Source of the DNA: Octopus bimaculoides
Taxonomy: Eukaryota
Direction of reading: 5' to 3'
NCBI RefSeq assembly: GCF_001194135.2
Contig: NC_068981.1
Location: 78,278,045 to 78,342,044 of the forward strand
Length of the DNA stretch: 64,000 bases
Below, one piece after another: positions 22,621 to 53,509 of the stretch. The first letter of the stretch is position 1; each line of letters starts with the position of its first letter. The position numbers and the translations under genes were made by a program. The notes beneath the pieces were generated by a model. It had not been told where the DNA came from. It ran no database searches and saw only the letters and a list, made by a program, of their open reading frames with translations.

Positions 22621-23329
22621 TTCCAACCATACAAAATCTCATCCAAACCATACCAGGCCAGTATAGATAGACAGACTTTAAAAAACTGAAATGATATTCT
22701 TATAATATGAAATAAATTTTGACATTAAATTTAGTTTTAAGATCCTGAACTGTGTGACTTTTATACATGCTATTATTATTTAGTTCCTTCACGTCAGCGT
22801 TGTTTGAATAGAATTAGGATCAAAAGCACTCAGACTTGACCAAAATCTGGGGGGTTTTTTCTTATTTTTTCATGACCTTTGTAAGTCCTCCTGAATTGAT
22901 ATATGTATGCATGTGTGTATGTGTGGGGTCAATTCATATATTTGTTCAAACTTCCAAAGTTGAGACTTGAATAGTCTCATGATAGTTGTAGACCATACTA
23001 TATGGTTCCAACCAAATCATAACTGAACACATATAAACTACAACAAAAAGCAATAAATATTTTTAAAATTCCTGTTAAATCAGGTACTCAAGAAGAATTT
23101 CTATAAAAAAGGAATAAATGTACTTTAATTGACTTTTATTGGTGTTACATTTTTTCTCATAAAATAAAATTATTGTTAATTTCGCATTTAATGCAAATGT
23201 TTATGAAAGAATGGCCATGACTTGTAACGCTTATAAGTTAAGTACATTTAGAATGTGTATCTCTTTTTCTCTCTCTTTTTCTCAACATATATATACACGT
23301 ATGTATTTGTGTGTGTGTGTGTGTGTGTG

Positions 23330-23370
<41 letters not shown>

Positions 23371-23430
23371 TTGTGTGTGTGTATATATATATGTATTTAT
23401 TTATATATATATGTATGTATGTATTTGTGT

Positions 23431-24070
23431 AACATTAGAAGCATCAGTTGTGGCGTGCAAGAGAGACGATTGCGCTGGTATGGACATGTGGTGAGAATGG
23501 AGGAGGATAGCTGCGTGAAAAAGTGCCACACCCTAACAGTTGAGGGAACCCGTGGAAGAGGTAGGCCCAGGAAGACCTGGGCTGAGGTGGTGAGGCAAGA
23601 CTTTCGTACATTGGGCCTCACCGAGGCGATGACTACTGACCGAGACCTTTGGAAATGTGCTGTGCGTGAGAAGACCCGGCAAGCCAAGTAAGATCGTTGC
23701 CAGTGCCCCTGGACTGGTTCTTGTGCGGGTGGCACATGAGATGCACCATTTTGAGCGTGGCCGTTGCCAGTACCGCCTGACTGGCTCCTGTAGGATTTTC
23801 GAGCGAGATCGTTGCCAGTGCCCCTGGACTGGNNNNNNNNNNGGCACATAAAAGACACCATTTCGAGCGTGGCCGTTTTCGTGCGGGTGACACGTAAAAG
23901 CACCCACTACACTCTCTGAGTGGTTGGCGTTAGGAAGGGCATCCAGCTGTAGAAACTCTGCCAAATCAGACTGGAGCCTGGTGTTGCCATCCGGTTTCAC
24001 CAGTCCTCAGTCAAATCGTCCAACCCATGCTAGCATGGAAAGCGGACGTTAAACGATGATGATGATGATG
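23431..24070 (+). mobile_element. RTE-clade LINE, 5'-truncated 3' end with 3' UTR and (GAT)n tail
   Basis: VQERRLRWYGHVVRMEEDSCVKKCHTLTVEGTRGRGRPRKTWAEVVRQD...DRDLWKCAVREKTRQAK* is a typical RTE ORF C-terminus. CpG-rich (young); ends CCCATGCTAGCATGGAAAGCGGACGTTAAACGATGATGATG. Confidence 0.88.
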
Positions 24071-24189: not shown

Positions 24190-24690
24190 AAATCAGATAT
24201 TAATTAATATCGATTTGTTACCAGGAAGCTAGCACATTGAAAGAATCCGAGAGATTCAGAACGAAGACATTTGATTTTTACCAGTTCCTTGAACACTTCC
24301 ACATCAACATCATTTACATCTCTAAGATTACCTGGAAGAATGTTGAACAATTGCAGGCCCTTGAAACCCAGACTATTGCAGTACTATGTCCTTATGGGGA
24401 AGATGGGATCTTTGGTATGATGTAGTGCTGTCCACTTTGAGGATTGATATAGCTGTCAATTCCCAAATTGGGAGCTAAACCCTCAAAGATAGCAACGCTG
24501 TATTCCGATTTTAGCCTGGGCCGATATTGGAGTGCCTGAAATTTTATAGCATTGAATTGCATGTTATATTTGTTAGCCCATTTGTAAATTTCATTCAGGT
24601 CTTTCTGAAGTTTTATGAGGCCCTCTGGGTTCCTAACTGCCTGTGATACTTTTGTGTCGTCAGCATAACTGGTCAGATTGGCTGACTGTA
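24190..24690 (-). mobile_element. CR1/Jockey-superfamily LINE fragment (RT domain plus C-terminus, internally deleted)
   Basis: SYADDTKVSQAVRNPEGLIKLQKDLNEIYKWANKYNMQFNAIKF; downstream on the minus strand YCNSLGFKGLQLFNILPGNLRDVNDVDVEVFK. Confidence 0.78.
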
Positions 24691-24695
24691 CTGTG

Positions 24696-24756
<61 letters not shown>

Positions 24757-26135
24757 ATACATCCTTTTGTTGTTTACACCACTTGTCCTTGTCTGTTGTT
24801 GTTTTTTTCATAAATTCTCCCATATATATATATATATATATTAGACAAAAATAGATAACAAAGCCAAGAGGTAGATAGAGTGAGAGGAAGAATCTACATT
24901 TTAGCTTTTGGATAATGTAAGGTGTATAGTCATATGGTGTCTAAAAATATTAGCAGTTTTACAAAAATGACTGCTAAAATAAGTACTAGGCCTAAAAAAT
25001 AAAGCACTGAGATTGATTTCAAGGCAGTGCCCCAGCGTGACCACAGTTCAGTGACTGAAACAAGTAAAAGATTACAAGAAAAAGATAAAAAACAGCCAGA
25101 TTAAGTCTACTGTCTAAGAGACCTCTACACAGTTGCCATGTGCTCAGTTTCACTCATAAGACTCTGGTCAGTCTGAGGCTCTGATAAAAGACACTTGTTC
25201 AAACTGTTGTACAATGTGAATGAACATAGAATCATGTAGTTGCAAACAGAACTGCTTAAGTTCTAACTGTACACCCACCACTATGTGCTTAATCAATTTT
25301 AAGAATTATGTTGTATGGCTGCAACATCACCCATTATCAAAACAAACTTTCTCTTATTCTCTAAGAATAGTTTCTGCGGGGGGGGTTTTCAAAAGAAAAA
25401 AACTAGAAGATAAAAAATTTGTATAATTTATTGCTGTTGTTTTAGGGGATTTTTAAGGAAAAGGAGATCATTGGAAAATACCAACAAAATAAAAACAAAA
25501 GAGAAATCTAACAATGCACCCTTCTCTTATCAGGTAATTCTTTTATCAGTGATAGCAGGAACATCCAGAATTAAGTAACATCAACTTTAGAAAGATTGTA
25601 TCAAAAACAAAAAGTATGTAAAAAAAAAATGAACAAAACTTCAAGAAAATAACATCATTGAAGACAAAATATGAAAGAAAAGATAAAGTACTCTTAAATT
25701 GGCAAAAAAGCAATTCTGAAAAAAATTAAGTTCCAAGGTCATAATTTTGGTCTTTTATTCTAATGATAATAATAACAGTAAATTCAGATTATCTCTAAGT
25801 TTTAGTGTATGGTTTTAAGGATGACTATATATACACAAAATATACAGAACAGTTAATGTTTATGTGGATGTCCCCCCCAACTCTCAAAATAGCTTACTCC
25901 CTCTTGTAGACAATCAGACACACACACACACATACTTGAGTCTCTCACATAGAAATTGTGTGCTCATGAAATGTACAAATGTATTTTCATTGATGTTTGC
26001 ACGGAATAATGCCCATACATCATTTGCAACATTTCCTATTATTACTACCCTGATCAGACAAATTAAGCTCCCAAAATACTTTATTCTCCATGCCAGTCTC
26101 CACCACATGAAGGAACTTTAGACAGGTTGAATGTG

Positions 26136-27075: not shown

Positions 27076-27270
27076 TATTCAGAAACATATGGTTAGCCCA
27101 GTGTGTGTGTGTGTGTCACCCAGTTGAGGGCACCTCGAGGTTGAGAAACATCTAAATCAAATCCACATCTCTCAACATAGTGGCCTAATATTGTGATTTT
27201 GAAGTATAAACAATGAACGGTAAGTACATTCATGTCTCAGTTCATCTAACTGTCAGGGTCCAGTACCATT

Positions 27271-27725
27271 TACAGTTCTATATTTAAGAGATGAGGAATC
27301 ATGTACATTATTTACATTAGACCGATATTTGTCCTCATCTTTGTTGTTAACACACCGTTTCGGCTGATATACCCTCCAGCCTTCATCAGGTGTCTTGGGG
27401 AAATTTCAAGCCTGGGTTCTCATTCCTAAGGTATTTTTCGATGCTATTATTATTATTATTCAGGTCACTGCCTGGAATTGAACTCGGAATCTTGGGGTTA
27501 GTAGTCCACGCTCTTAACCACTACTGCATATGCCCACGGGCATATGGCGTAGTGGTTAAGAGTGTGGGCTACTAACCCCAAGATTCTGAGATCAATTTCA
27601 GGCAGTGACATGAATAATAATAATAATAATAATAACATTGAAAAATACCCTAGGAATGAGAATCCAGGTTCGAAATTTGCCCAAAACAAGATGAAGACAA
27701 ATATCCATCAAATGTAAATAATGTG
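27271..27725. mobile_element. Fold-back element: head-to-head dimer of a tRNA-headed SINE-like unit with a hammerhead motif (copy 1)
   Basis: Palindrome 27303-27725 centred on GCCC-AC-GGGC (27532-27541). Each arm has a tRNA-like head (A box TGGCGTAGTGG 27545-27555; B box GAGTTCAATTCC on the minus strand 27474-27485), an (AAT)n tract and a body. Flanked by the 10-bp direct repeat CAGTACCATT (27261-27270, 27726-27735), a candidate TSD. Confidence 0.85.
27349..27394 (-). ncRNA. Minimal type I hammerhead ribozyme motif (variant at position 16.1)
   Basis: Minus strand reads GACAC-CTGATGA-A-GGCTG(gagggtatat)CAGCC-GAAA-CGGT-GTGTT: stem I, catalytic core, 5-bp stem II, GAAA. CGGT differs from the inferred family consensus CGTT. 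Confidence 0.6.
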
Positions 27726-28300
27726 CAGTACCATTAAATTTACATGTTTGCTCAAAATCCCAGAAAAAGCAGCCAAATCTCCCTCAAATCACGTCTTACT
27801 GACTCAAAAAAGTGGAAGGGAACTTGGTATATAACAGAGTCCTAGACATACAAAAAAGCTGAGCTGGTCAAGACTGAAACATCTTTAATCATAGGTTTGT
27901 GCATATCATCTTTAATAGTAAACCTTTGCACTAAACAACAATTAAGAATCATGTAGTTCAGACTTAGAAGAAAAAAATACAAAATTCATTAGAGATATGA
28001 AAGAGCAAGTTTCTACCAAGATATTTCATAGTTAAGTAAAAATGGTAAACAAAACTGCAAGAGTCATCAAGTGCTAATGTTCTTGAAATGGCCAAGTGCT
28101 ATGTTCAAAAGTTCATAAACATCAGAGTAATTTTTATCAGTTGTTTTATCATCATTTTGTCACAGACTTATTTGCTAATAGCCATAATCTTCAGTTGAAA
28201 AATTAACCTTCTGATTTGTGCATATATATATATATATATATTGCAGACTTATCTGGTAATAGCCATAATCTTTATTAGAAAAATTAACCTTCTGATCTGT

Positions 28301-30294: not shown

Positions 30295-30798
30295 TTTTTA
30301 AATTTATCTATATATAATATATAAAATTTATCTATATATAATATATAATATATAAAATTTATCTATATATAATATATAATATATAAAATTTATCTATATA
30401 TAATAGNNNNNNNNNNNNNNNNNNNNNNNNNNNNNNNNNNNNNNNNNNNNNNNNNNNNNNNNNNNNNNNNNNNNNNNNNNNNNNNNNNNNNNNNNNNNNN
30501 NNNNNNNNNNNNNNNNNNNNNNNNNNNNNNNNNNNNNNNNNNNNNNNNNNNNNNNNNNNNNNNNTAATATATAAAATTTATCTATATATAATATATAAAA
30601 TTTATCTATATATAATATATAATATAAAATTTATCTATATATAATATATAATATATAAAATTTATCTATATATAATATATAATATATAAAATTTATTTAT
30701 CTATATATAATATATAAAATTTATCTATATATAATATATAATATATAAAATTTATCTATATATAATATATAATATATAAAATTTATCTATATATAATA
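30295..30798. repeat. AT-rich minisatellite, unit ~AAAATTTATCTATATATAATATATAATATAT
   Basis: Tandem copies with length variants on both sides of the gap at 30407-30563. Confidence 0.9.
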
Positions 30799-34775: not shown

Positions 34776-35039
34776 ATAAACCAAGTCCTCCAGCATTCAC
34801 AGAAGAATTGAAAGCTGGTAGTGTGAAAAAAGTTGGAGAACGCCAGATACTTAGTTGTCGAGCTTTTGGACTGCCAACACCAACATATTCTTGGTTGAAA
34901 AATGGCCAAGTATTTAATGATACCACTAATAGCTATATTGAACTGGAGCTTAAGCATTCTGATGCTGGGGAGTACCGTTGTATAGCCAAAAACTCCCAAG
35001 GGTCTATCATCAGCAACAAAGTTCATGTCCAAGTTTCAT
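34776..35039 (+). CDS. sdk: Sidekick-like Ig-superfamily adhesion protein, internal exon encoding Ig1
   Basis: Acceptor tttttttacttccAG (AG 34774-34775) and donor T|GTAAGT (GT 35040-35041); phase 1 at both ends. Translation (D)KPSPPAFTEELKAG...LSCRAFGLPTPTYSWLKNG...DAGEYRCIAKNSQGSIISNKVHVQVS has the Ig C...W...DxGxYxC signature. The spliced Ig1-Ig3 sequence resembles Sidekick as I recall it (VQVAYMGSF, ITSYPRPQVTWF, APTIVVPP, CIASARP, LTISNPTSADTG). Family assignment is by recognition, not BLAST. Confidence 0.88.
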
Positions 35040-36088: not shown

Positions 36089-39071
36089 CACAATGAGCTT
36101 CCCTTAGTTTCCATCTACCAAATCCATTCATAAGGCTTTGGTCAGCCTGAGACTATAGTAGAAGACTCTTGCCCAAGGTGTCATACAGTGAGACTGAACC
36201 TGGACCCATGTGGTCGGGAAGCAAGCTTCTTATCACAAAGCCACTCTTCTTTCCACACAGCCTATATATTTATATTTATATTTATATATATTTATATATA
36301 TAACATGTGTGTGTGTGTTTACATCTCCTGTAACTTGGAGGTTCAGCAAATGAGACCAACAGAATAATTACTACATTTTTAAAAAATGTATTTGGGTCAA
36401 TCTATTCAACTAAACCCTTCAAGGCAGTGCCCCAGCATGGCTACACTTCAATGACTGAAACCGGTAAAGGACAAAAGATAACTCCTTTCTCACTTTCGAT
36501 ATCCCTTACTAAGTTCTGTAATTAAACCTTCTCAGAACTGTCTTCCACTGTAATATTTTCTTCACCTTTCACCAATGTTTACCTTTATTCAACTCCAATT
36601 AATCATCAGTGTGACTAACACTCACACTTTACCGCACAACATGATCTTTGCAGTTTCACTTTCATAGTAGTAAATTAGAAATAAACACAGGTGCAGTGTT
36701 TCTGCATATATCTCATATTCTTTTTATCTTGTACTTGACTTCAACCATGCAAAGGCCTTGCCTTGAAAGATTTTAGTCAAAGAAATCGACTCCAGCACTT
36801 ATTTTTCCCACTTTTAAGTCTGATACTTATTCTATCAGTCTATTTTGCTGAACCACTTAGTTACAAGGGTGTAAACAAAGCATCATCACTTCTCCAGTGG
36901 TGTTGGGGGATAAGGACAGAAACAAAGACACACACACACTCATATGACAGACTTCCACAGTTTCCATCAACCAAATTAACTCACAAGATATTGGTCAGTC
37001 TAAGACTACAGTAGTGGACACTTACCCAAAGTGTCATGCAGTGTTGTCTTAATCACACAACAGTACCTGCACCTATCTCTGTCTGTGTGTTAGCTGAGTT
37101 GTTAATCAACAAGACTGTAAGGTACAAAGCTGATGAAATGAATCTTAGCTACTAGCATTGTTCAGAGAAGACATTGTTATTTTACCTCACTTAATCTCTT
37201 TACTCATGTTTGCTGACTGTAAACAAAACAACCTCACTATCAATAATACAAGCAGTGCCATATGCTTGTAATCAACTGTAAAAGCATGTCTGGGTTTCTG
37301 GACATGTCATGACATGTTATTTAATCTTTCTTAACAAAAACATTTGAAGCTATATCTTGGGCATTCATTGTTTGATAGACTATGGGGATTATTACCTTGT
37401 TTGGCAACAAGCAAGAGTTGGTGACCGGAGGGCATCCAGGCTTAGAAAATCTTCTCCAGTGAATTCCATCTAACCTATGCAAGAATGGAAAAGTGAGCAT
37501 TAGAAAGACAATGATGGCAAATGTAATTGAAAATCTGAAACCTTTCTCTCTCTTTTATTATGGTTAGTGAAGGGAAATATCCTAGCAGTAATTAAAAATT
37601 GCTACCATACAATTCACAGTAGCATATAAAGAGGAGAAAAGAAAATTAACTATTATAACAATGAAATCAATTTTTGTTTTAGTAATGCTCTGAACAGTTT
37701 TTGTATGATGAGTATAATAAATTAAATTAACTTTGATATACATTACTTGGTCCTAAGCAAGACCTTAAATTGCATCTTGTGGTGAAGTACCAGCTTGGGA
37801 GTTGAGGAGCATAGAGGAGTATAGAATTACCCTTTAGTCACTGTTACTACTTCCAGATCTGCTTTGGCCTGGGGTGGTGCAACCTGTTAAGGGCTCCAGT
37901 TATAGATCAAATAACAGAAGATGGTCCTGTGACAAAAGCATACAGGGCTCAGAAGAGGGCTATTCTCTAGATGTATGTATCACACAGGCTCACCAATGTG
38001 TGGACATAGCCTAATATCATGTGAGCCAGTTCCCCTGCCCAAAGATTGAATAGGCCCTGTGACTCAAAGGCAAACTCAGAAGAGCAGGAATCCAGCAGAT
38101 TAAATGACATAAACTAGCAGAAGGCAATAAGGAATATTGCTGTAAGTTTCCCTATGAAAGTCAGGAATCTTCAGTATGGCACATAAAGAGAGATCTACCA
38201 TAAGCTTAAACTGGCTATAACAGTAAATTTAGTATTAACATTTTTAATGCAGGGAGCATTAAAAAGTAAACTAGAAGTAGTTACACTGTGAGGAAAACTA
38301 CAATTCAGTGCTAATAATGTTTCATTTAGCATGCACAGAAGACAACTCTTAACATATTTTCATCTTTCTATGAGATTCAGTGAAGCATAGAGTGTACCTT
38401 ATATCTTCATGGACTTCTGAGATAGAGAAAGATGGAAATTATTATTAAATAGTTATATTGAATTAGTGTCTTCATCTTGGCTGTTTTTGTCACAACATTT
38501 TGGCCATTGTACTTATCAGCTTTCTTCAGGGAACTGTTCTGTTTGGTGACATTCTAAGAATTTCGATCAAAACCCTTTCTCCATTGTCAGTACAAGAATA
38601 TTCTCTTACTTGTGTTGATGCTTGCTTGCTTTCATTTCAATCAGAGTATATATGTTTAGAATGAATGCACTCTAATGCTTATATTCACTATCTCCCATTA
38701 TCCTGACATCATATGTAGAAAAAAAAAATAACTGGATTAACAAAAAAAAATTTGGCCCAAAATTTCGAGAATCTTCACAAATGCAAGAGATCCATGAAGA
38801 AAGTAGTGGGGATCAATGGCCAAAACATTACGACTATTACAAACAAGATAGGAACACTTGTCTGAATATATGAGTGTATATTCACTATATCTGTCAAAGT
38901 TATGGAATAAAGATAAGTACAGGTGTAGTTGTATGGTAAGAAGCTTACTTCCCAACCGCATGGTTCCAGTTCAGTTCCACTGTGTGGCACCTTGGGCAAG
39001 TGTCTTCTACTATAGCCTAAGGCCAACCAAAGTATTGTGAGTGGATCTGGTAGATGGAACCTGAAAGAAGC

Positions 39072-39105
<34 letters not shown>

Positions 39106-39769
39106 NNNNNNNNNNNNNNNNNNNNNNNNNNNNNNNNNNNNNNNNNNNNNNNNNNNNNNNNNNNNNNNNNNNNNNNNNNNNNNNNNNNNNNNNNNNNNNN
39201 NNNNNNNNNNNNNNNNNNNNNNNNNNNNNNNNNNNNNNNNNNNNNNNNNNNNNNNNNNNNNNNNNNNNNNNNNNNNNNNNNNNNNNNNNNNNNNNNNNNN
39301 NNNNNNNNNNNNNNNNNNNNNNNNNNNNNNNNNNNNNNNNNNNNNNNNNNNNNNNNNNNNNNNNNNNNNNNNNNNNNNNNNNNNNNNNNNNNNNNNNNNN
39401 NNNNNNNNNNNNNNNNNNNNNNNNNNNNNNNNNNNNNNNNNNNNNNNNNNNNNNNNNNNNNNNNNNNNNNNNNNNNNNNNNNNNNNNNNNNNNNNNNNNN
39501 NNNNNNNNNNNNNNNNNNNNNNNNNNNNNNNNNNNNNNNNNNNNNNNNNNNNNNNNNNNNNNNNNNNNNNNNNNNNTTGATGTGTTTACATCCCTGTAAC
39601 TTGGCAGTTCAGCAAGAGAGATGATAGAAGTACTAGGCTTAAAATATAAATCCTTCAAAGTGGTGCTCTAGTATGGCCGCAGTCGAATGGCTGAAACAAA
39701 TAAGAGACTACTAAGTTGTCTACTTATTGTCGTAGGTAAATAAAGCTGTTTGGAGAATGTTCCTTCCAT

Positions 39770-42984: not shown

Positions 42985-43105
42985 AGCGCATGGCCTAATG
43001 GTTAGGCTGTTGCACTCATGATTGTTAGAGTATGAGTTCAATTCCCTGACTGGGTGGTGCATTGTGTTTTTGAGCAAAACACTTCATTTCACATTGCTCT
43101 AGTTC
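42985..43105 (+). mobile_element. tRNA-SINE 5' part (same core family as 1268-1612)
   Basis: GCGCATGGCCTAATGGTTAGG...GAGTTCAATTCCC...GTGTTTTTGAGCAAAACACTTCATTTCAC; truncated where an ATT-tailed SINE begins. Confidence 0.7.
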
Positions 43106-43109
43106 CCAT

Positions 43110-43326
43110 TAAAGGCAGCAAACTAGCAGAATCATTAGTATTCTGAGCAAAATTCTTAGCGGTATTTTGCCTGTCTTTACATTCTGAGTTCAAATTCCGC
43201 TGAGGTCAACTTTGTCTTTCATCCTTTCGGGGCTCAATAAATCAAGTACCAGTGAAACACTGGGGTCAGTGTAATTGACTAGTCCCCTCCCCCAAAATGT
43301 CAGGCCTTGTGCCTTTAGTAGAAAGG

Positions 43327-43360
<34 letters not shown>

Positions 43361-43600
43361 CACCAAACTGGCAGAATCATTAGCATGCCAGACAAAATGC
43401 TTAGCAGTATTTCGTCTGTCACAACATTCTGTGTTAAAATTCTGCTGAGGTCGATTTTGCCTTTCATCCTTTGAGGTTCAATAAATCAAGTACCAGTGGA
43501 GTACTGGAGTCAATGTGATTGACTGTCCTCCTCCCCACAAAATCCAGGCCTTGTGCCTATAGTAGAAAGAATTATTATTATTATCATTATTATTATTATT
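43110..43600 (+). mobile_element. Two head-to-tail copies of an (ATT)n-tailed SINE-like element
   Basis: Each ~240-bp unit reads GGCAGAATCATTAG...GAGTTCAAATTCCGCTGAGGTC...CAGGCCTTGTGCCT.TAGTAGAAAGGATTATTATT. Other copies at 2700-2920 (+) and ~17840-18105 (+). Confidence 0.8.
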
Positions 43601-44000
43601 ATATAGAGAGAAGAGTTCTTTACTTGTATACGATTGACATAATCCATCACTAAGATAAACATAGCTGACGTAATCCATCACCAAGGCAAACTTAATGACG
43701 AAAAGCGTTACTCAAAAGCAACAGTTGTTTATTTGTAGTTGAACTATATTTCTGCATCTCGTGTGCCTTCCACAGGTTCAAAATAAACATGTCAGTCTAA
43801 TTCATTTTTTAGTTTATATAGAACTGAAGTAACTCAACAGAAGTTATATAGATATAGAGAGAAGAGTTCTTTACTTGTATACGATTGACACAATCCATCA
43901 CTAAAGTAAACATAGCTTACGTAATCCATCACCAAGGCAAACTTGTTGGCCTTGTGCCAAAATTTGAAATCATTATTATTAATACAGAAATCATTATTAA

Positions 44001-44186
44001 TTAATATTTAAGAGATGAGGAATTATGTACATTATTTACATTTGACGGATATTTGTCCTCATCTTGTTTGTTGTTAACATGTTTCGGCTGATATACCCAC
44101 CAGCCTTCATCAGGTGTCTGGAGAAAATTTCAAACCTGGGTTCTCATTCCTGAGGTATTTTTTCAATGTCATCATCATCATCATCA

Positions 44187-44255
<69 letters not shown>

Positions 44256-44501
44256 TCACTGCCTGGTATCAAACTTGGAATCTTATCTTAGGGTTAGTAG
44301 CCACTATGCCATATGCTCAAGTTCAATTCCAGGCTGTGACCTGAATAATAATAATAATGACATTGAAAAATATCTCAGGAATGAGAATCCAGGTTCAAAA
44401 TTTCCCCAAGACACCTGATGAAGGCTGGAGGGTATATCAGCCGAAATGTTGTGTTAACAACAAACGAGATGAGGACAAATATCCGTCAAAAGTAAATAAT
44501 G
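44001..44501. mobile_element. Fold-back tRNA-SINE/hammerhead element (copy 2), centre partly deleted
   Basis: Arms ~44030-44266 and ~44328-44501 are near-perfect reverse complements apart from the (ATT)n length. It shares the left-only extension ATTTAAGAGATGAGGAAT with copy 1. Confidence 0.88.
44410..44455 (+). ncRNA. Minimal type I hammerhead ribozyme motif on the sdk sense strand
   Basis: GACAC(44410-14)-CTGATGA(44415-21)-A-GGCTG/CAGCC stem II(44423-42)-GAAA(44443-46)-TGTT-GTGTT(44451-55). A mirror copy lies on the minus strand at ~44076-44118 with a small deletion after GAAA. Confidence 0.62.
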
Positions 44502-44574
44502 CATTATTATTGTTATTGTTATTATTATCTATTTACTTATTGATTTATATCTTTTCTCACATCTTTGCTTGTAG

Positions 44575-44865
44575 ATATCAGCTCTTTTGATATGACCTCA
44601 ATACCTCAAACAATCAGGGCTAATGTTGGAGACGCCATTATTTTACCTGTACCTCCTATAGAAAGTGTGCCTTTTCCTGAAATAACGTGGTTCAATGGGA
44701 CAAAAAGCTTAAAAGCTGAAAGTAAACGTTATGACTTTACTGTAAACCATTCATTAGTCTTATTGAATTTGTCTCCTCATGATGATGGCAGGACCTTCCA
44801 TGTCAGAGCCAACAACACGCTAGATGAACCAGTTTCCAGTGAATCTTTCACTATTTTCATTACAA
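44575..44865 (+). CDS. sdk: Sidekick-like protein, internal exon encoding Ig2
   Basis: Acceptor ctttgcttgtAG (44573-44574), donor A|GTAAGA (44866). T from the previous exon + AT = Tyr, giving YISSFDMTSIPQTIRANVGDAIILPVPPIESVPFPEITWFNG...SLVLLNLSPHDDGRTFHVRANNTLDEPVSSESFTIFIT. Lacks the canonical Ig cysteines, as does Sidekick Ig2 in my recollection. Confidence 0.88.
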
Positions 44866-51639: not shown

Positions 51640-51974
51640 NNNNNNNNNNNNNNNNNNNNNNNNNNNNNNNNNNNNNNNNNNNNNNNNNNNNNNNNNNNNN
51701 NNNNNNNNNNNNNNNNNNNNNNNNNNNNNNNNNNNNNNNNNNNNNNNNNNNNNNNNNNNNNNNNNNNNNNNNNNNNNNNNNNNNNNNNNNNNNNNNNNNN
51801 NNNNNNNNNNNNNNNNNNNNNNNNNNNNNNNNNNNNNNNNNNNNNNNNNNNNNNNNNNNNNNNNNNNNNNNNNNNNNNNNNNNNNNNNNNNNNNNNNNNN
51901 NNNNNNNNNNNNNNNNNNNNNNNNNNNNNNNNNNNNNNNNNNNNNNNNNNNNNNNNNNNNNNNNNNNNNNNNNN

Positions 51975-53309: not shown

Positions 53310-53509
53310 ACCATTAAAATATAACATCTCATGGTTCCGAAAAGTGAAAAACGAAAGTATCTTACTTACTGGGCCTAAATACATTCTATCAAAATATAAA
53401 CGGAAATTAAATATTAAAAATCCTACTACAGCCGACAGTGGCATCTATGAATGTGTAGTGAAATCAAACTACCCCACTGTCAGAGCATCAGCTCGTCTTA
53501 CCGTACTAG
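53310..53509 (+). CDS. sdk: Sidekick-like protein, exon encoding the C-terminal half of Ig3
   Basis: Acceptor gttttattttcAG (53308-53309), donor G|GTAAGT (53510). AG+A = Arg continues the frame: (R)PLKYNISWFRKVKNESILLTGPKYILSKYKRKLNIKNPTTADSGIYECVVKSNYPTVRASARLTVL, with the Ig W and DSGxYxC motifs; phase 1 out. Confidence 0.88.

What the first reader, a model, noticed from the sequence alone, without database searches (positions are those of the whole stretch)
44001..44575. ~470-nt hairpin with a sense-strand hammerhead just upstream of the sdk Ig2 exon
Seen: the second fold-back copy ends at 44501, 73 nt before the exon start at 44575, so its long stem sits beside the likely branch-point/polypyrimidine region. 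Its + strand hammerhead (44410-44455) is in the pre-mRNA orientation. After GAAA, this arm has TG and the left arm has CA, where copy 1 has CG. This is the pattern expected from CpG decay of an ancestral palindromic ACGT. Established: long intronic dsRNA is an ADAR substrate, and coleoid cephalopods edit neural transcripts extensively. Inference: the hairpin could be hyper-edited, modulate Ig2 exon inclusion, or keep an intronic ribozyme inactive.
Basis: partly seen in the sequence, partly recalled or inferred. Interest (0 to 1): 0.72.

Follow-up and report, generated by a model that had tools for sequence, protein, structure and literature searches.

The report
Hammerhead-bearing palindromic retroposon in sdk intron
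The 470-nt hairpin with a hammerhead motif upstream of the sidekick Ig2 exon is a real, lineage-specific insertion of a small palindromic retroposon of the Penelope-like type, so it is an ordinary mobile-element relic and not a conserved splicing or ribozyme switch.

Summary
Window 44030-44501 forms a long hairpin (RNA MFE -279 kcal/mol, z = -24.9). Positions 44410-44455 (+) satisfy a full minimal type-I hammerhead descriptor, which found 3 hits in the window and 0 in 200 shuffles. The hairpin ends 73 nt before a sidekick Ig2 exon.

The hairpin is a mobile element spanning 43981-44501, flanked by a 10-bp target-site duplication (CATTATTATT). A related octopus contig carries the empty site, with the exon 96% identical. 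A sister copy (27271-27725) has its own 10-bp duplication.

Each arm is a roughly 270-nt unit:
- A/B-box (tRNA-type) head at the palindrome centre
- (AAT)n tract
- body
- minimal hammerhead with helix III reduced to palindromic A-CG-U
- 3' stem-loop

The two units lie head-to-head, and only one end carries a 35-49-nt tail. This is the published insertion architecture of Penelope-like elements, whose hallmark is this type of minimal, dimer-dependent hammerhead.

This copy has decayed (CG>UG), has no partner in cis, and is about 91% base-paired with the opposite arm. Predicted pairing at the branch-point/polypyrimidine zone is the same with and without the insertion.

Hyper-editing is plausible but generic. 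A dedicated role in splicing or ribozyme control is not supported. I class it as a new member of a known kind, of low-to-moderate interest.

The parts
43971..43980 (.). Left target-site duplication, CATTATTATT
   Evidence: An identical 10-mer lies at 44502-44511. The related-species contig L001 has a single copy.
43981..44029 (-). One-sided 49-nt 'tail'. It is the 3' extension of the left-arm unit and includes a 13-nt extra copy of the target (GAAATCATTATTA, 43987-43999).
   Evidence: It has no counterpart on the right arm. Copy 1 has the homologous 35-nt tail at 27271-27305.
44030..44306 (-). Left arm: one retroposon unit in minus-strand sense, with its 3' region at the outer end and the remnant of the tRNA-like head at the centre.
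   Evidence: Alignment A1; nhmmer E = 3e-73.
44073..44118 (-). Decayed minus-strand hammerhead. The core is intact, but it reads CA instead of CG after GAAA, and a 3-nt deletion removes N17 and the helix I strand.
   Evidence: Core match at 44082-44113 (-). It fails the full descriptor. Alignment.
44171..44251 (.). Expanded (ATC)6(ATT)21 microsatellite within the left arm. The right arm has only (AAT)5 at 44344-44358, so this tract forms the asymmetric internal loop of the hairpin.
44307..44501 (+). Right arm: one retroposon unit in plus-strand (pre-mRNA) sense. It ends at ...GTAAATAATG, the same truncation point as in copy 1.
   Evidence: Alignment A1; nhmmer E = 1.3e-68.
44410..44455 (+). 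Minimal type-I hammerhead motif. Helix I is GACAC/GUGUU. The core is CUGAUGA, followed by an unpaired A. Helix II is GGCUG(G)/CAGCC with G10.1-C11.1. GAAA follows, then A15.1-U-G-U16.1 (ancestrally ACGU) and U17. Predicted cleavage is at 44450|44451.
   Evidence: Descriptor hit with 0/200 shuffle hits. The isolated 46-mer folds into helices I and II (-12.7 kcal/mol). In the intron context it is paired with the left arm with probability 0.91.
44502..44511 (.). Right target-site duplication, CATTATTATT
44512..44574 (+). Remaining intron, with the polypyrimidine tract and the AG acceptor.
   Evidence: 87% identical to the related species.
44575..44865 (+). Sidekick Ig2 exon (291 nt, phase 1-1)
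27271..27725 (.). Sister fold-back ('copy 1') of the same family. It has the TSD CAGTACCATT (27261-27270 / 27726-27735), an intact palindrome centre near 27536, an A+B box at 27545-27599 (+), a hammerhead core only on the minus strand (27358-27389), and a 35-nt tail at 27271-27305.

Best explanation
The hairpin is a single insertion (43981-44501) of a short non-autonomous retroposon. The element integrates as a head-to-head inverted dimer.

Each arm is a roughly 270-nt unit containing:
- a tRNA-type Pol III promoter head (A box starting at unit position 8, plus a B box)
- an (AAT)n tract
- a body
- a minimal type-I hammerhead
- a 3' stem-loop

Only one outer end carries an extra 35-49-nt tail.

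Shown here: transposition as a unit (10-bp target-site duplications in two copies), absence from the orthologous site of a related species, the hammerhead descriptor match, and the promoter boxes.

Inferred: the element is mobilised by a Penelope-like element (PLE). Three features of PLE insertions are all present. These are an inverted adjacent copy, a tail at one end only, and a helix-III-less hammerhead with a palindromic 15.1-16.1 segment near the 3' end. The palindrome centre coincides with the expected 5' end of the Pol III transcript. This suggests that the reverse transcriptase reached the RNA 5' end and then copied back along its own cDNA or a second template, stopping about 35-49 nt short of the end.

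In the sdk pre-mRNA the two arms pair into a self-contained duplex of about 200 bp in total. This duplex buries the single, already mutated, partner-less hammerhead, so no self-cleavage is expected. The duplex is a likely incidental ADAR substrate. It is not expected to affect Ig2 exon recognition.
For: - Hairpin stability: z = -24.9.
- Exact 10-bp TSDs at both copies.
- Empty site in Logan contig L001, with the exon 96% and the introns 87-89% identical.
- Same arm structure, same right-arm truncation point and same one-sided tail in both copies.
- A third, old head-to-head pair with the right geometry at 38414-38533 (-) / 38788-38862 (+).
- A+B box composite at 27545-27599, with 0 hits in shuffles.
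- Minimal hammerhead descriptor: 3 hits versus 0 in 200 shuffles.
- The motif has the published min-HHR traits: short helix I, an unpaired nucleotide after A9, G10.1-C11.1, and palindromic 15.2-16.2 (PMC4209133).
- The same paper reports dual min-HHRs 100-700 bp apart on opposite strands.
- The PLE insertion architecture (inverted adjacent copy, 30-40-bp tail at one end, HHR near the 3' end) is described in PMC8557442.
- PLEs are recently active in Octopus (PMC13282606).
- Arm-to-arm identity (91%) is similar to intron identity between the species.
- Hammerhead pairing probability is 0.91, and pairing of the splice-site zone is unchanged.
Against: - No Rfam hammerhead model scores the motif, so the call rests on a descriptor I wrote after seeing the sequence.
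- Only three hammerhead-bearing arms are available, so no covariation test is possible.
- Of the three arms, only 44410-44455 passes the full descriptor. Copy 1 has G at position 16.1.
- No PLE reverse transcriptase lies in the window. The only RT fragment (24392-24823, minus strand) has a LINE-like YADD motif. The PLE link is therefore architectural, not genetic.
- ARAGORN and the Rfam tRNA model do not recognise the head as a tRNA.
- The upstream flank in the empty-site contig is only 31 nt long.
Confidence: 0.8

Rival explanations
1. In this view the hairpin is a regulatory RNA structure. Through ADAR hyper-editing or steric effects next to the branch point, it would tune inclusion of the Ig2 exon.
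For: - The duplex is long and nearly perfect, and it lies 73 nt from the acceptor site.
- The exon is phase-symmetric (291 nt), so skipping it would keep the reading frame.
- Octopus neural RNA is heavily hyper-edited at dsRNA (PMC5625713).
Against: - It is a transposon insertion with TSDs.
- It is absent from a related species that keeps the exon and acceptor region.
- The arms decay at an intron-like rate.
- Predicted accessibility of 44535-44574 is the same for the filled allele (0.53) and the empty allele (0.57).
- The hairpin does not pair with the 44502-44574 segment at all (0.0 expected pairs).
Confidence: 0.07
2. An active intronic self-cleaving ribozyme that cuts the sdk pre-mRNA at 44450|44451.
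For: - The full catalytic core is present, and helices I and II are intact.
- The motif is in the sense orientation relative to the gene (exons at 34776-35039, 44575-44865 and 53310-53509 on the + strand).
Against: - There is no helix III. Motifs of this type show no detectable cleavage as monomers and only weak cleavage as dimers in vitro (PMC4209133).
- C15.2 has mutated to U.
- There is no second plus-sense copy in the intron. The old 38788-38862 copy has lost G12 and C3.
- The left arm is transcribed first, and it pairs with the motif with probability 0.91.
Confidence: 0.03
3. The same insertion, but mobilised by a LINE (an RTE/CR1-type SINE partner) and not by a Penelope-like element. The inverted dimer would then arise by twin priming or template switching.
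For: - The element has a tRNA-type A/B-box head, as classical SINEs do.
- 10-bp TSDs are compatible with LINE target-primed reverse transcription.
- LINEs and SINEs dominate octopus repeats.
- A LINE RT fragment lies in the window.
Against: - There is no poly(A) or simple-repeat 3' end.
- A full-length inverted partner plus a tail at one end only recurs in both copies with the same truncation point. This is the described PLE signature.
- The min-HHR is a PLE hallmark.
Confidence: 0.15
4. A fold-back DNA transposon or MITE with long terminal inverted repeats, for example a Mutator-like element with 9-11-bp TSDs.
For: - The inverted arms are long.
- Both copies have TSDs of equal length (10 bp).
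Against: - The two termini are not inverted copies of each other. The left terminus is (AA)TACAG..., and the right terminus, reverse-complemented, is CA(CA)TTATTTAC...
- The left end carries 35-49 extra nucleotides of variable internal length.
- Pol III promoter boxes and a hammerhead point to an RNA intermediate.
Confidence: 0.05

Closest known systems
Minimal type-I hammerheads (min-HHRs) of metazoan Penelope-like elements (Cervera & de la Pena 2014, PMC4209133)
   Same: - Type-I topology
- 5-bp helix I
- Unpaired nucleotide between A9 and 10.1
- G10.1-C11.1
- Helix III reduced to A15.1-NN-U16.1 with a palindromic 15.2-16.2 (ancestral ACGU)
- Position near the element's 3' end
- Dual copies a few hundred bp apart on opposite strands
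   Different: - No PLE ORF or pseudo-LTR is attached.
- The carrier has a tRNA-type promoter head.
- The present copy has U15.2, so the self-pair is a G-U wobble.
- Activity is untested.
Penelope-like element insertion architecture (Craig et al. 2021, PMC8557442)
   Same: - An inverted copy abutting the 5' end, which creates flanking inverted repeats
- A 30-40-bp tail at only one end
- A target in or near a microsatellite for copy 2
   Different: - The whole unit is only about 270 nt.
- The inverted partner is essentially full length at its 5' end, so the result is a near-perfect palindrome and not a partial one.
Schistosome Sm-alpha / Sj-alpha SINE-like retroposons with hammerheads (Ferbeyre et al. 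1998, cited; the promoter detail is from my own knowledge)
   Same: A short non-autonomous retroposon that combines Pol III A/B boxes with a type-I hammerhead.
   Different: - Sm-alpha carries a canonical hammerhead with a helix III hairpin.
- Sm-alpha is arranged in tandem or dispersed copies, not as an obligate inverted dimer.
- The host phylum differs.
Metazoan non-LTR retrozymes (PMC7761336; bioRxiv 10.64898/2026.07.22.740005)
   Same: Non-coding, hammerhead-bearing and thought to be PLE-dependent.
   Different: - Retrozymes are direct tandem repeats with a hammerhead in each unit, and they produce circRNAs.
- Here the copies are inverted, so no tandem dimer or circle can form.
Palindromic or inverted repeats as ADAR hyper-editing substrates (Porath et al. 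2017, PMC5625713)
   Same: A nearly perfect intramolecular dsRNA within a pre-mRNA, of the kind that is hyper-edited in octopus, frog (palindromic Harbinger repeat) and lizard (Penelope).
   Different: Editing at this locus has not been examined.

Membership tests
Hammerhead ribozyme (Rfam families Hammerhead_1, _3, _II, HH9, HH10) | A covariance-model match at or near the gathering score | tested here: not met
   There was no hammerhead hit at gathering score over the whole window. There was also none at E <= 10 on 43900-44650, 44385-44480 or 56480-56760. This is expected if helix III is absent, but the test still fails.
Hammerhead ribozyme (general) | Catalytic core C3-U4-G5-A6-N7-G8-A9 and G12-A13-A14, an A15.1-U16.1 pair, H17, and three helices in type-I order | tested here: met
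   44410-44455 (+) passes the descriptor. Shuffled windows gave 0 hits in 200 trials. Helices I and II appear in the MFE fold of the isolated 46-mer. Helix III exists only as a self-complementary 4-mer.
PLE-type min-HHR | Short helix I (4-5 bp), an unpaired nucleotide after A9, and G10.1-C11.1 | tested here: met
   Helix I is GACAC/GUGUU (5 bp, including one G-U). A44422 is unpaired. Helix II is GGCUG/CAGCC, matching the features listed in PMC4209133.
PLE-type min-HHR | Palindromic 15.2-16.2, which allows a dimeric helix III | tested here: inconclusive
   The present copy reads AUGU (self-pairs only with two G-U wobbles). The left arm reads ACAU and copy 1 reads ACGG. ACGU is inferred as ancestral for copy 2 from opposite CpG-decay products. 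Three sequences are too few to fix the family consensus.
PLE-type min-HHR | Self-cleavage, as a dimer | not testable with these tools
   This needs in vitro transcription or RNA-end mapping.
Penelope-like element (non-autonomous derivative) | Insertion architecture: an adjacent inverted copy, a 30-40-bp tail at one end only, and TSDs | tested here: met
   The two arms lie head-to-head. Tails of 35 nt (27271-27305) and 49 nt (43981-44029) occur at the left end only. Both copies have 10-bp TSDs. The description is in PMC8557442.
Penelope-like element (non-autonomous derivative) | Sequence shared with an autonomous PLE (RT plus GIY-YIG) of the same genome | not testable with these tools
   No cephalopod genome collection was available. 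No PLE ORF lies in the window. Pattern scans of the metagenome and viral collections found nothing.
tRNA-derived SINE | Internal Pol III A and B boxes at tRNA spacing at the 5' end | tested here: met
   TGGCGTAGTGG...GATCAATTTC lies at 27545-27599, with the A box starting at unit position 8. Shuffles gave 0 hits. A B-box remnant GTTCAATTCC lies at 44321-44330.
tRNA-derived SINE | Recognisable tRNA cloverleaf homology | tested here: not met
   ARAGORN found no tRNA in the window. The Rfam tRNA model did not match even at E <= 10.
Non-LTR retrozyme | At least two direct tandem units, each carrying a type-I hammerhead | tested here: not met
   The copies are inverted, not tandem.
MITE / fold-back DNA transposon | Terminal inverted repeats reaching the very ends of the insertion | tested here: not met
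   The outermost 35-49 nt on the left have no inverted counterpart on the right.
ADAR hyper-editing substrate | A long, nearly perfect intramolecular dsRNA in a transcribed region | tested here: met
   The arms are 90-96% complementary, with pairing probability of about 0.93. The hairpin lies inside the Ig1-Ig2 intron of a plus-strand gene.
ADAR hyper-editing substrate | Clustered A-to-G mismatches in RNA reads | not testable with these tools
   No RNA-seq data were accessible.

The most novel reading that the evidence does not exclude
This family may be an undescribed class of cephalopod retroposon. It would be a Pol III-promoted, hammerhead-bearing SINE that a Penelope-like reverse transcriptase copies by obligate snap-back, so that every new insertion is born as a near-perfect palindrome of about 450 nt. 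If it is abundant in neural gene introns, such elements would be a built-in generator of long dsRNA. They could explain part of octopus's exceptional dsRNA and hyper-editing load.
Probability: 0.2. Interest if true: 0.55.

Novelty: new member of a known kind. Interest (0 to 1): 0.3.

Why it matters
The result removes a tempting over-interpretation. The hairpin and the 'intronic ribozyme' next to a neural adhesion-gene exon are the footprint of one transposition event, not an evolved switch.

It also documents something I found no report of in the papers searched here. A Penelope-type minimal hammerhead sits on a small element with tRNA-type promoter boxes in an octopus, and the element inserted as a ready-made palindrome three times within 64 kb.

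If a genome-wide census shows the family is common in introns, it would give a concrete source for the unusually high density of long dsRNA that underlies octopus hyper-editing. It would also provide a natural system for studying how Penelope-like reverse transcriptases generate inverted copies.

Tried and rejected
- Rfam searches, at gathering score on the whole window and at E <= 10 on three sub-regions, gave no hammerhead or tRNA match. They returned only sub-threshold microRNA-family hits that reflect generic hairpin shape. I rejected these as family assignments.
- ARAGORN found no tRNA in the window.
- I tried to collect more genomic copies through spurious ORFs. The 74-aa antisense open frame across the element found no candidate in the protein collection.
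- Exact-pattern scans for the 32-nt core in metagenome contigs and viral contigs found nothing. No family-wide consensus or covariation analysis was therefore possible.
- A Pfam scan of the ten longest ORFs found no PLE RT or GIY-YIG domain. It found only a weak LINE-type RT fragment.
- I considered an alternative helix III built on the TGTTAACA palindrome just downstream. I rejected it because no U16.1-H17-helix I strand follows it.
- I considered that the hammerhead core is conserved above background. One change in 32 nt across three arms, against about 4 expected, is not significant, so I make no such claim.
- A 9-bp 3' stem-loop is predicted in both copies, but it is only marginally better than shuffles (z = -1.4 to -1.8). 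I treat it as descriptive only.

Full report
**1. Observation**

The inverted repeat is real. Its arms are 44030-44079/44452-44501 (50 nt, 96% complementary) and 44082-44162/44366-44446 (81 nt, 90%). As RNA, 43981-44574 folds into one long hairpin at -279 kcal/mol, against -115 +/- 6.6 kcal/mol for dinucleotide shuffles (z = -24.9).

The right arm ends at 44501. The AG acceptor lies at 44573-44574, and the exon runs 44575-44865 (291 nt) before a GT. Its open frame matches Pfam I-set (E = 3.7e-7). Its best solved-structure matches are sidekick-1/2 at chain residues 109-184, the second Ig domain.

Neighbouring plus-strand exons match sidekick collinearly. Exon 34776-35039 matches residues 10-94 (Ig1), and exon 53310-53509 matches residues 247-288 (Ig3).

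**2. The hammerhead motif**

The pattern CTGATGA-N(6-34)-GAAA occurs 8 times in the window, against 1.8 expected by chance. The three copies of the 32-nt core, which differ at one loop base, lie at 44415-44446 (+), 44082-44113 (-) and 27358-27389 (-).

No Rfam hammerhead model reports any of them, even at E <= 10. I therefore wrote a descriptor for a minimal type-I hammerhead with these requirements:
- helix I of at least 4 bp
- CUGANGA
- 0-1 unpaired nucleotide
- helix II of at least 4 bp
- GAAA
- a self-complementary A15.1...U16.1 segment
- H17

The descriptor hits 44410-44455 (+), plus two sites of a different family at 56663-56703 (+) and 56540-56580 (-). It found nothing in 200 dinucleotide shuffles of the window.

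The motif reads GACAC|CUGAUGA|A|GGCUG(G)...CAGCC|GAAA|UG|U|U^GUGUU. The predicted cleavage site is 44450|44451. The isolated 46-mer folds with helices I and II in its MFE structure.

These features match the min-HHR of metazoan Penelope-like elements described by Cervera & de la Pena (PMC4209133):
- helix I of 4-5 bp
- a conserved G10.1-C11.1 pair
- no helix III beyond the core nucleotides
- palindromic 15.2-16.2, so that two motifs form a dimeric helix III

That paper reports no cleavage as monomers and only weak cleavage as dimers in vitro.

In hammerhead sense, the right arm has UG, the left arm has CA and copy 1 has CG. This is consistent with an ancestral A-CG-U for this copy. Copy 1 has G at position 16.1. 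The left arm has a 3-nt deletion that removes N17 and the helix I strand. Only the plus-strand copy still passes the descriptor.

**3. Anatomy of the element**

I aligned the four arms: copy 1 left and right, and copy 2 left and right. The alignment shows a common unit of about 270 nt. From the palindrome centre outward it contains:
- a head with Pol III A and B boxes. TGGCGTAGTGG...GATCAATTTC lies at 27545-27599, with the A box starting at unit position 8. The composite pattern gave 0 hits in shuffles.
- an (AAT)n tract
- a body
- the hammerhead
- a predicted 9-bp 3' stem-loop (weak z-score)

ARAGORN and the Rfam tRNA model do not recognise the head as a tRNA. 'tRNA-type promoter' is therefore supported, but 'tRNA-derived' is only inferred.

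In both copies the right arm stops at ...GTAAATAATG(TG). The left arm continues for 35 nt (27271-27305) or 49 nt (43981-44029).

In copy 2 the centre has lost most of the head. The left arm's microsatellite has expanded to (ATC)6(ATT)21 at 44171-44251. Copy 1's right arm has lost the hammerhead through a deletion of about 54 nt near 27683.

**4. It is a transposon insertion, and it is lineage-specific**

Exact 10-bp direct repeats flank both copies. CAGTACCATT lies at 27261-27270 and 27726-27735. CATTATTATT lies at 43971-43980 and 44502-44511.

A protein search with the exon peptide returned one hit, which came from a 955-bp Logan contig (SRR11869391, locus L001). In that contig the exon is 96% identical, and the flanking introns are 87-89% identical.

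The contig runs from CCTTGTGCCAAAATTTAAAATCATTATTATTA (window 43950-43980, 1 mismatch) straight into the sequence that follows the right TSD in the window. It carries a single CATTATTATT. That is an empty site.

Arm-to-arm identity is 91% in copy 2 and 87-91% in copy 1. Identity between the two copies is 92-94%. All these values are similar to or slightly higher than the interspecies intron identity. This fits a burst of insertions around or after the species split, followed by neutral decay.

**5. Mechanism and family**

Craig et al. (PMC8557442) describe PLE insertions as follows:
- often preceded by an inverted 5'-truncated copy, which forms inverted repeats flanking the unit
- a 30-40-bp tail at only one end
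- hammerheads near the 3' ends, within pseudo-LTRs

Cervera & de la Pena also noted dual min-HHRs 100-700 bp apart on opposite strands. The fold-back has every one of these features, in two independent insertions.

An older, degenerate pair lies at 38414-38533 (-, nhmmer E = 8e-7) and 38788-38862 (+, E = 1.8). It has the spacing expected for two heads between the arms. PLEs are present and recently active in Octopus (PMC13282606).

My preferred model is a non-autonomous, Pol III-promoted element mobilised by a PLE. Because the palindrome centre coincides with the expected transcript 5' end, I infer that the reverse transcriptase turned back at the RNA 5' end and copied its own cDNA or a second template. 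This last step is inference only.

The termini are not inverted copies of each other, which argues against a MITE or fold-back DNA transposon. The lack of a poly(A) or simple-repeat tail, together with the recurrent tail and inversion, argues against an ordinary LINE-driven SINE. Without the genome this alternative is not excluded.

**6. Consequences for sdk**

In a partition-function fold of 43850-44650, the arms are paired with probability of about 0.93, and the hammerhead with probability 0.91. The 44502-44574 segment makes no pairs with the arms.

The mean pairing probability of the branch-point/polypyrimidine zone (44535-44574) is 0.53 with the insertion. It is 0.57 in the joined-flank (empty) construct. 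The hairpin is therefore predicted to be self-contained.

The plus strand of this intron has no second intact hammerhead of the family to act as a dimer partner. Self-cleavage is therefore not expected.

Hyper-editing of the duplex is plausible on general grounds. Octopus CNS showed the largest hyper-editing signal and an exceptionally high fraction of loci able to form long dsRNA in Porath et al. (PMC5625713). That would be a generic property of such insertions, and it could not be tested here.

**7. Comparison with known systems and novelty**

The closest known systems are:
- PLE min-HHRs and the PLE insertion architecture
- the Sm-alpha/Sj-alpha hammerhead SINE-like elements of schistosomes
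- metazoan non-LTR retrozymes, which differ in being tandem rather than inverted

Rfam Hammerhead_1 loci have been counted in a squid genome (235 loci, PMC6962438). My literature searches found no description of a hammerhead-bearing palindromic retroposon in cephalopods.

I rate it a new member of a known kind. It has modest interest in itself. It would be somewhat more interesting if a census shows that such ready-made palindromes are common in neural introns.

**8. What could not be done**

No cephalopod genome or RNA-seq collection was available. Attempts to retrieve further copies failed. As a result, family-wide conservation and covariation of the hammerhead, the identity of the autonomous partner, and editing, splicing or cleavage at this locus all remain untested.

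Noticed in passing
window 56444-56608 / 56635-56805: This is a second, unrelated fold-back. The arms are 78% identical overall, and about 95% identical in the inner 63 nt. A more canonical type-I hammerhead motif sits on each outward-reading strand at 56540-56580 (-) and 56663-56703 (+). It reads GGUG|CUGAUGA|AAGAG-CAAUAA-CUCUU|GAAA|palindrome UAUGCAUA|U|A^CACC (the minus-strand copy ends CAUC). Here the hammerheads lie near the palindrome centre. Rfam does not call them. There are no other copies in the window. TA/TG microsatellites lie on both sides at some distance.
   Followed up: partly
window 38414-38533 (-) and 38788-38862 (+): This is an old, degenerate relative of the same family in the same head-to-head orientation. 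The cores have decayed to CUGAAGA...AAAA and AUGAAGA...AAAA. The roughly 254-nt spacing matches two head halves. The plus-strand half is not significant on its own (E = 1.8).
   Followed up: partly
window ~27683: The right arm of copy 1 has lost about 54 nt, including the whole hammerhead. That copy therefore has a hammerhead only on the minus strand.
   Followed up: yes
window 43987-43999: The left tail of the insertion contains an extra 13-nt copy of the target sequence GAAATCATTATTA, which also occurs at 43966-43978. It lies between a shared TACAG motif and the conserved tail, which suggests a complex resolution of the integration intermediate.
   Followed up: partly
window 43113-43600 and 42991-43045: Two tandem units of about 244 nt belong to a different, apparently abundant SINE-like repeat (...AGGCACAAGGCC...) with (ATT)n tracts. 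A separate tRNA-like head with an A+B box lies at 42991-43045 (+). The region upstream of the insertion is a patchwork of repeats.
   Followed up: no
window 24392-24823 (-) and 23311-23691 (+): A LINE-type reverse-transcriptase fragment (Pfam RVT_1, E = 0.0015, with a YADD motif) is interrupted by (TA)n. A nearby ORF has a LINE-like C-terminal region. Neither is a Penelope-like RT.
   Followed up: partly
window 39106-39576, 30407-30564, 51640-51974, 56959-57142, 60238-60951 and five 10-20-nt runs: These are runs of N (assembly gaps or masked stretches). One lies inside the same Ig1-Ig2 intron, so part of the intron's repeat content is not visible.
   Followed up: no
window 44241-44354 and 27483-27590: Sub-threshold Rfam hits to microRNA precursor families (mir-607, MIR5380, MIR860 and others) cover the palindrome centres. 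They reflect generic hairpin geometry and are far below the gathering scores.
   Followed up: yes
window 34776-35039 and 53310-53509: These are plus-strand exons encoding sidekick-like Ig1 and the C-terminal half of Ig3, with AG/GT boundaries. They fix the gene's orientation and the 9.5-kb intron that hosts the fold-back.
   Followed up: partly
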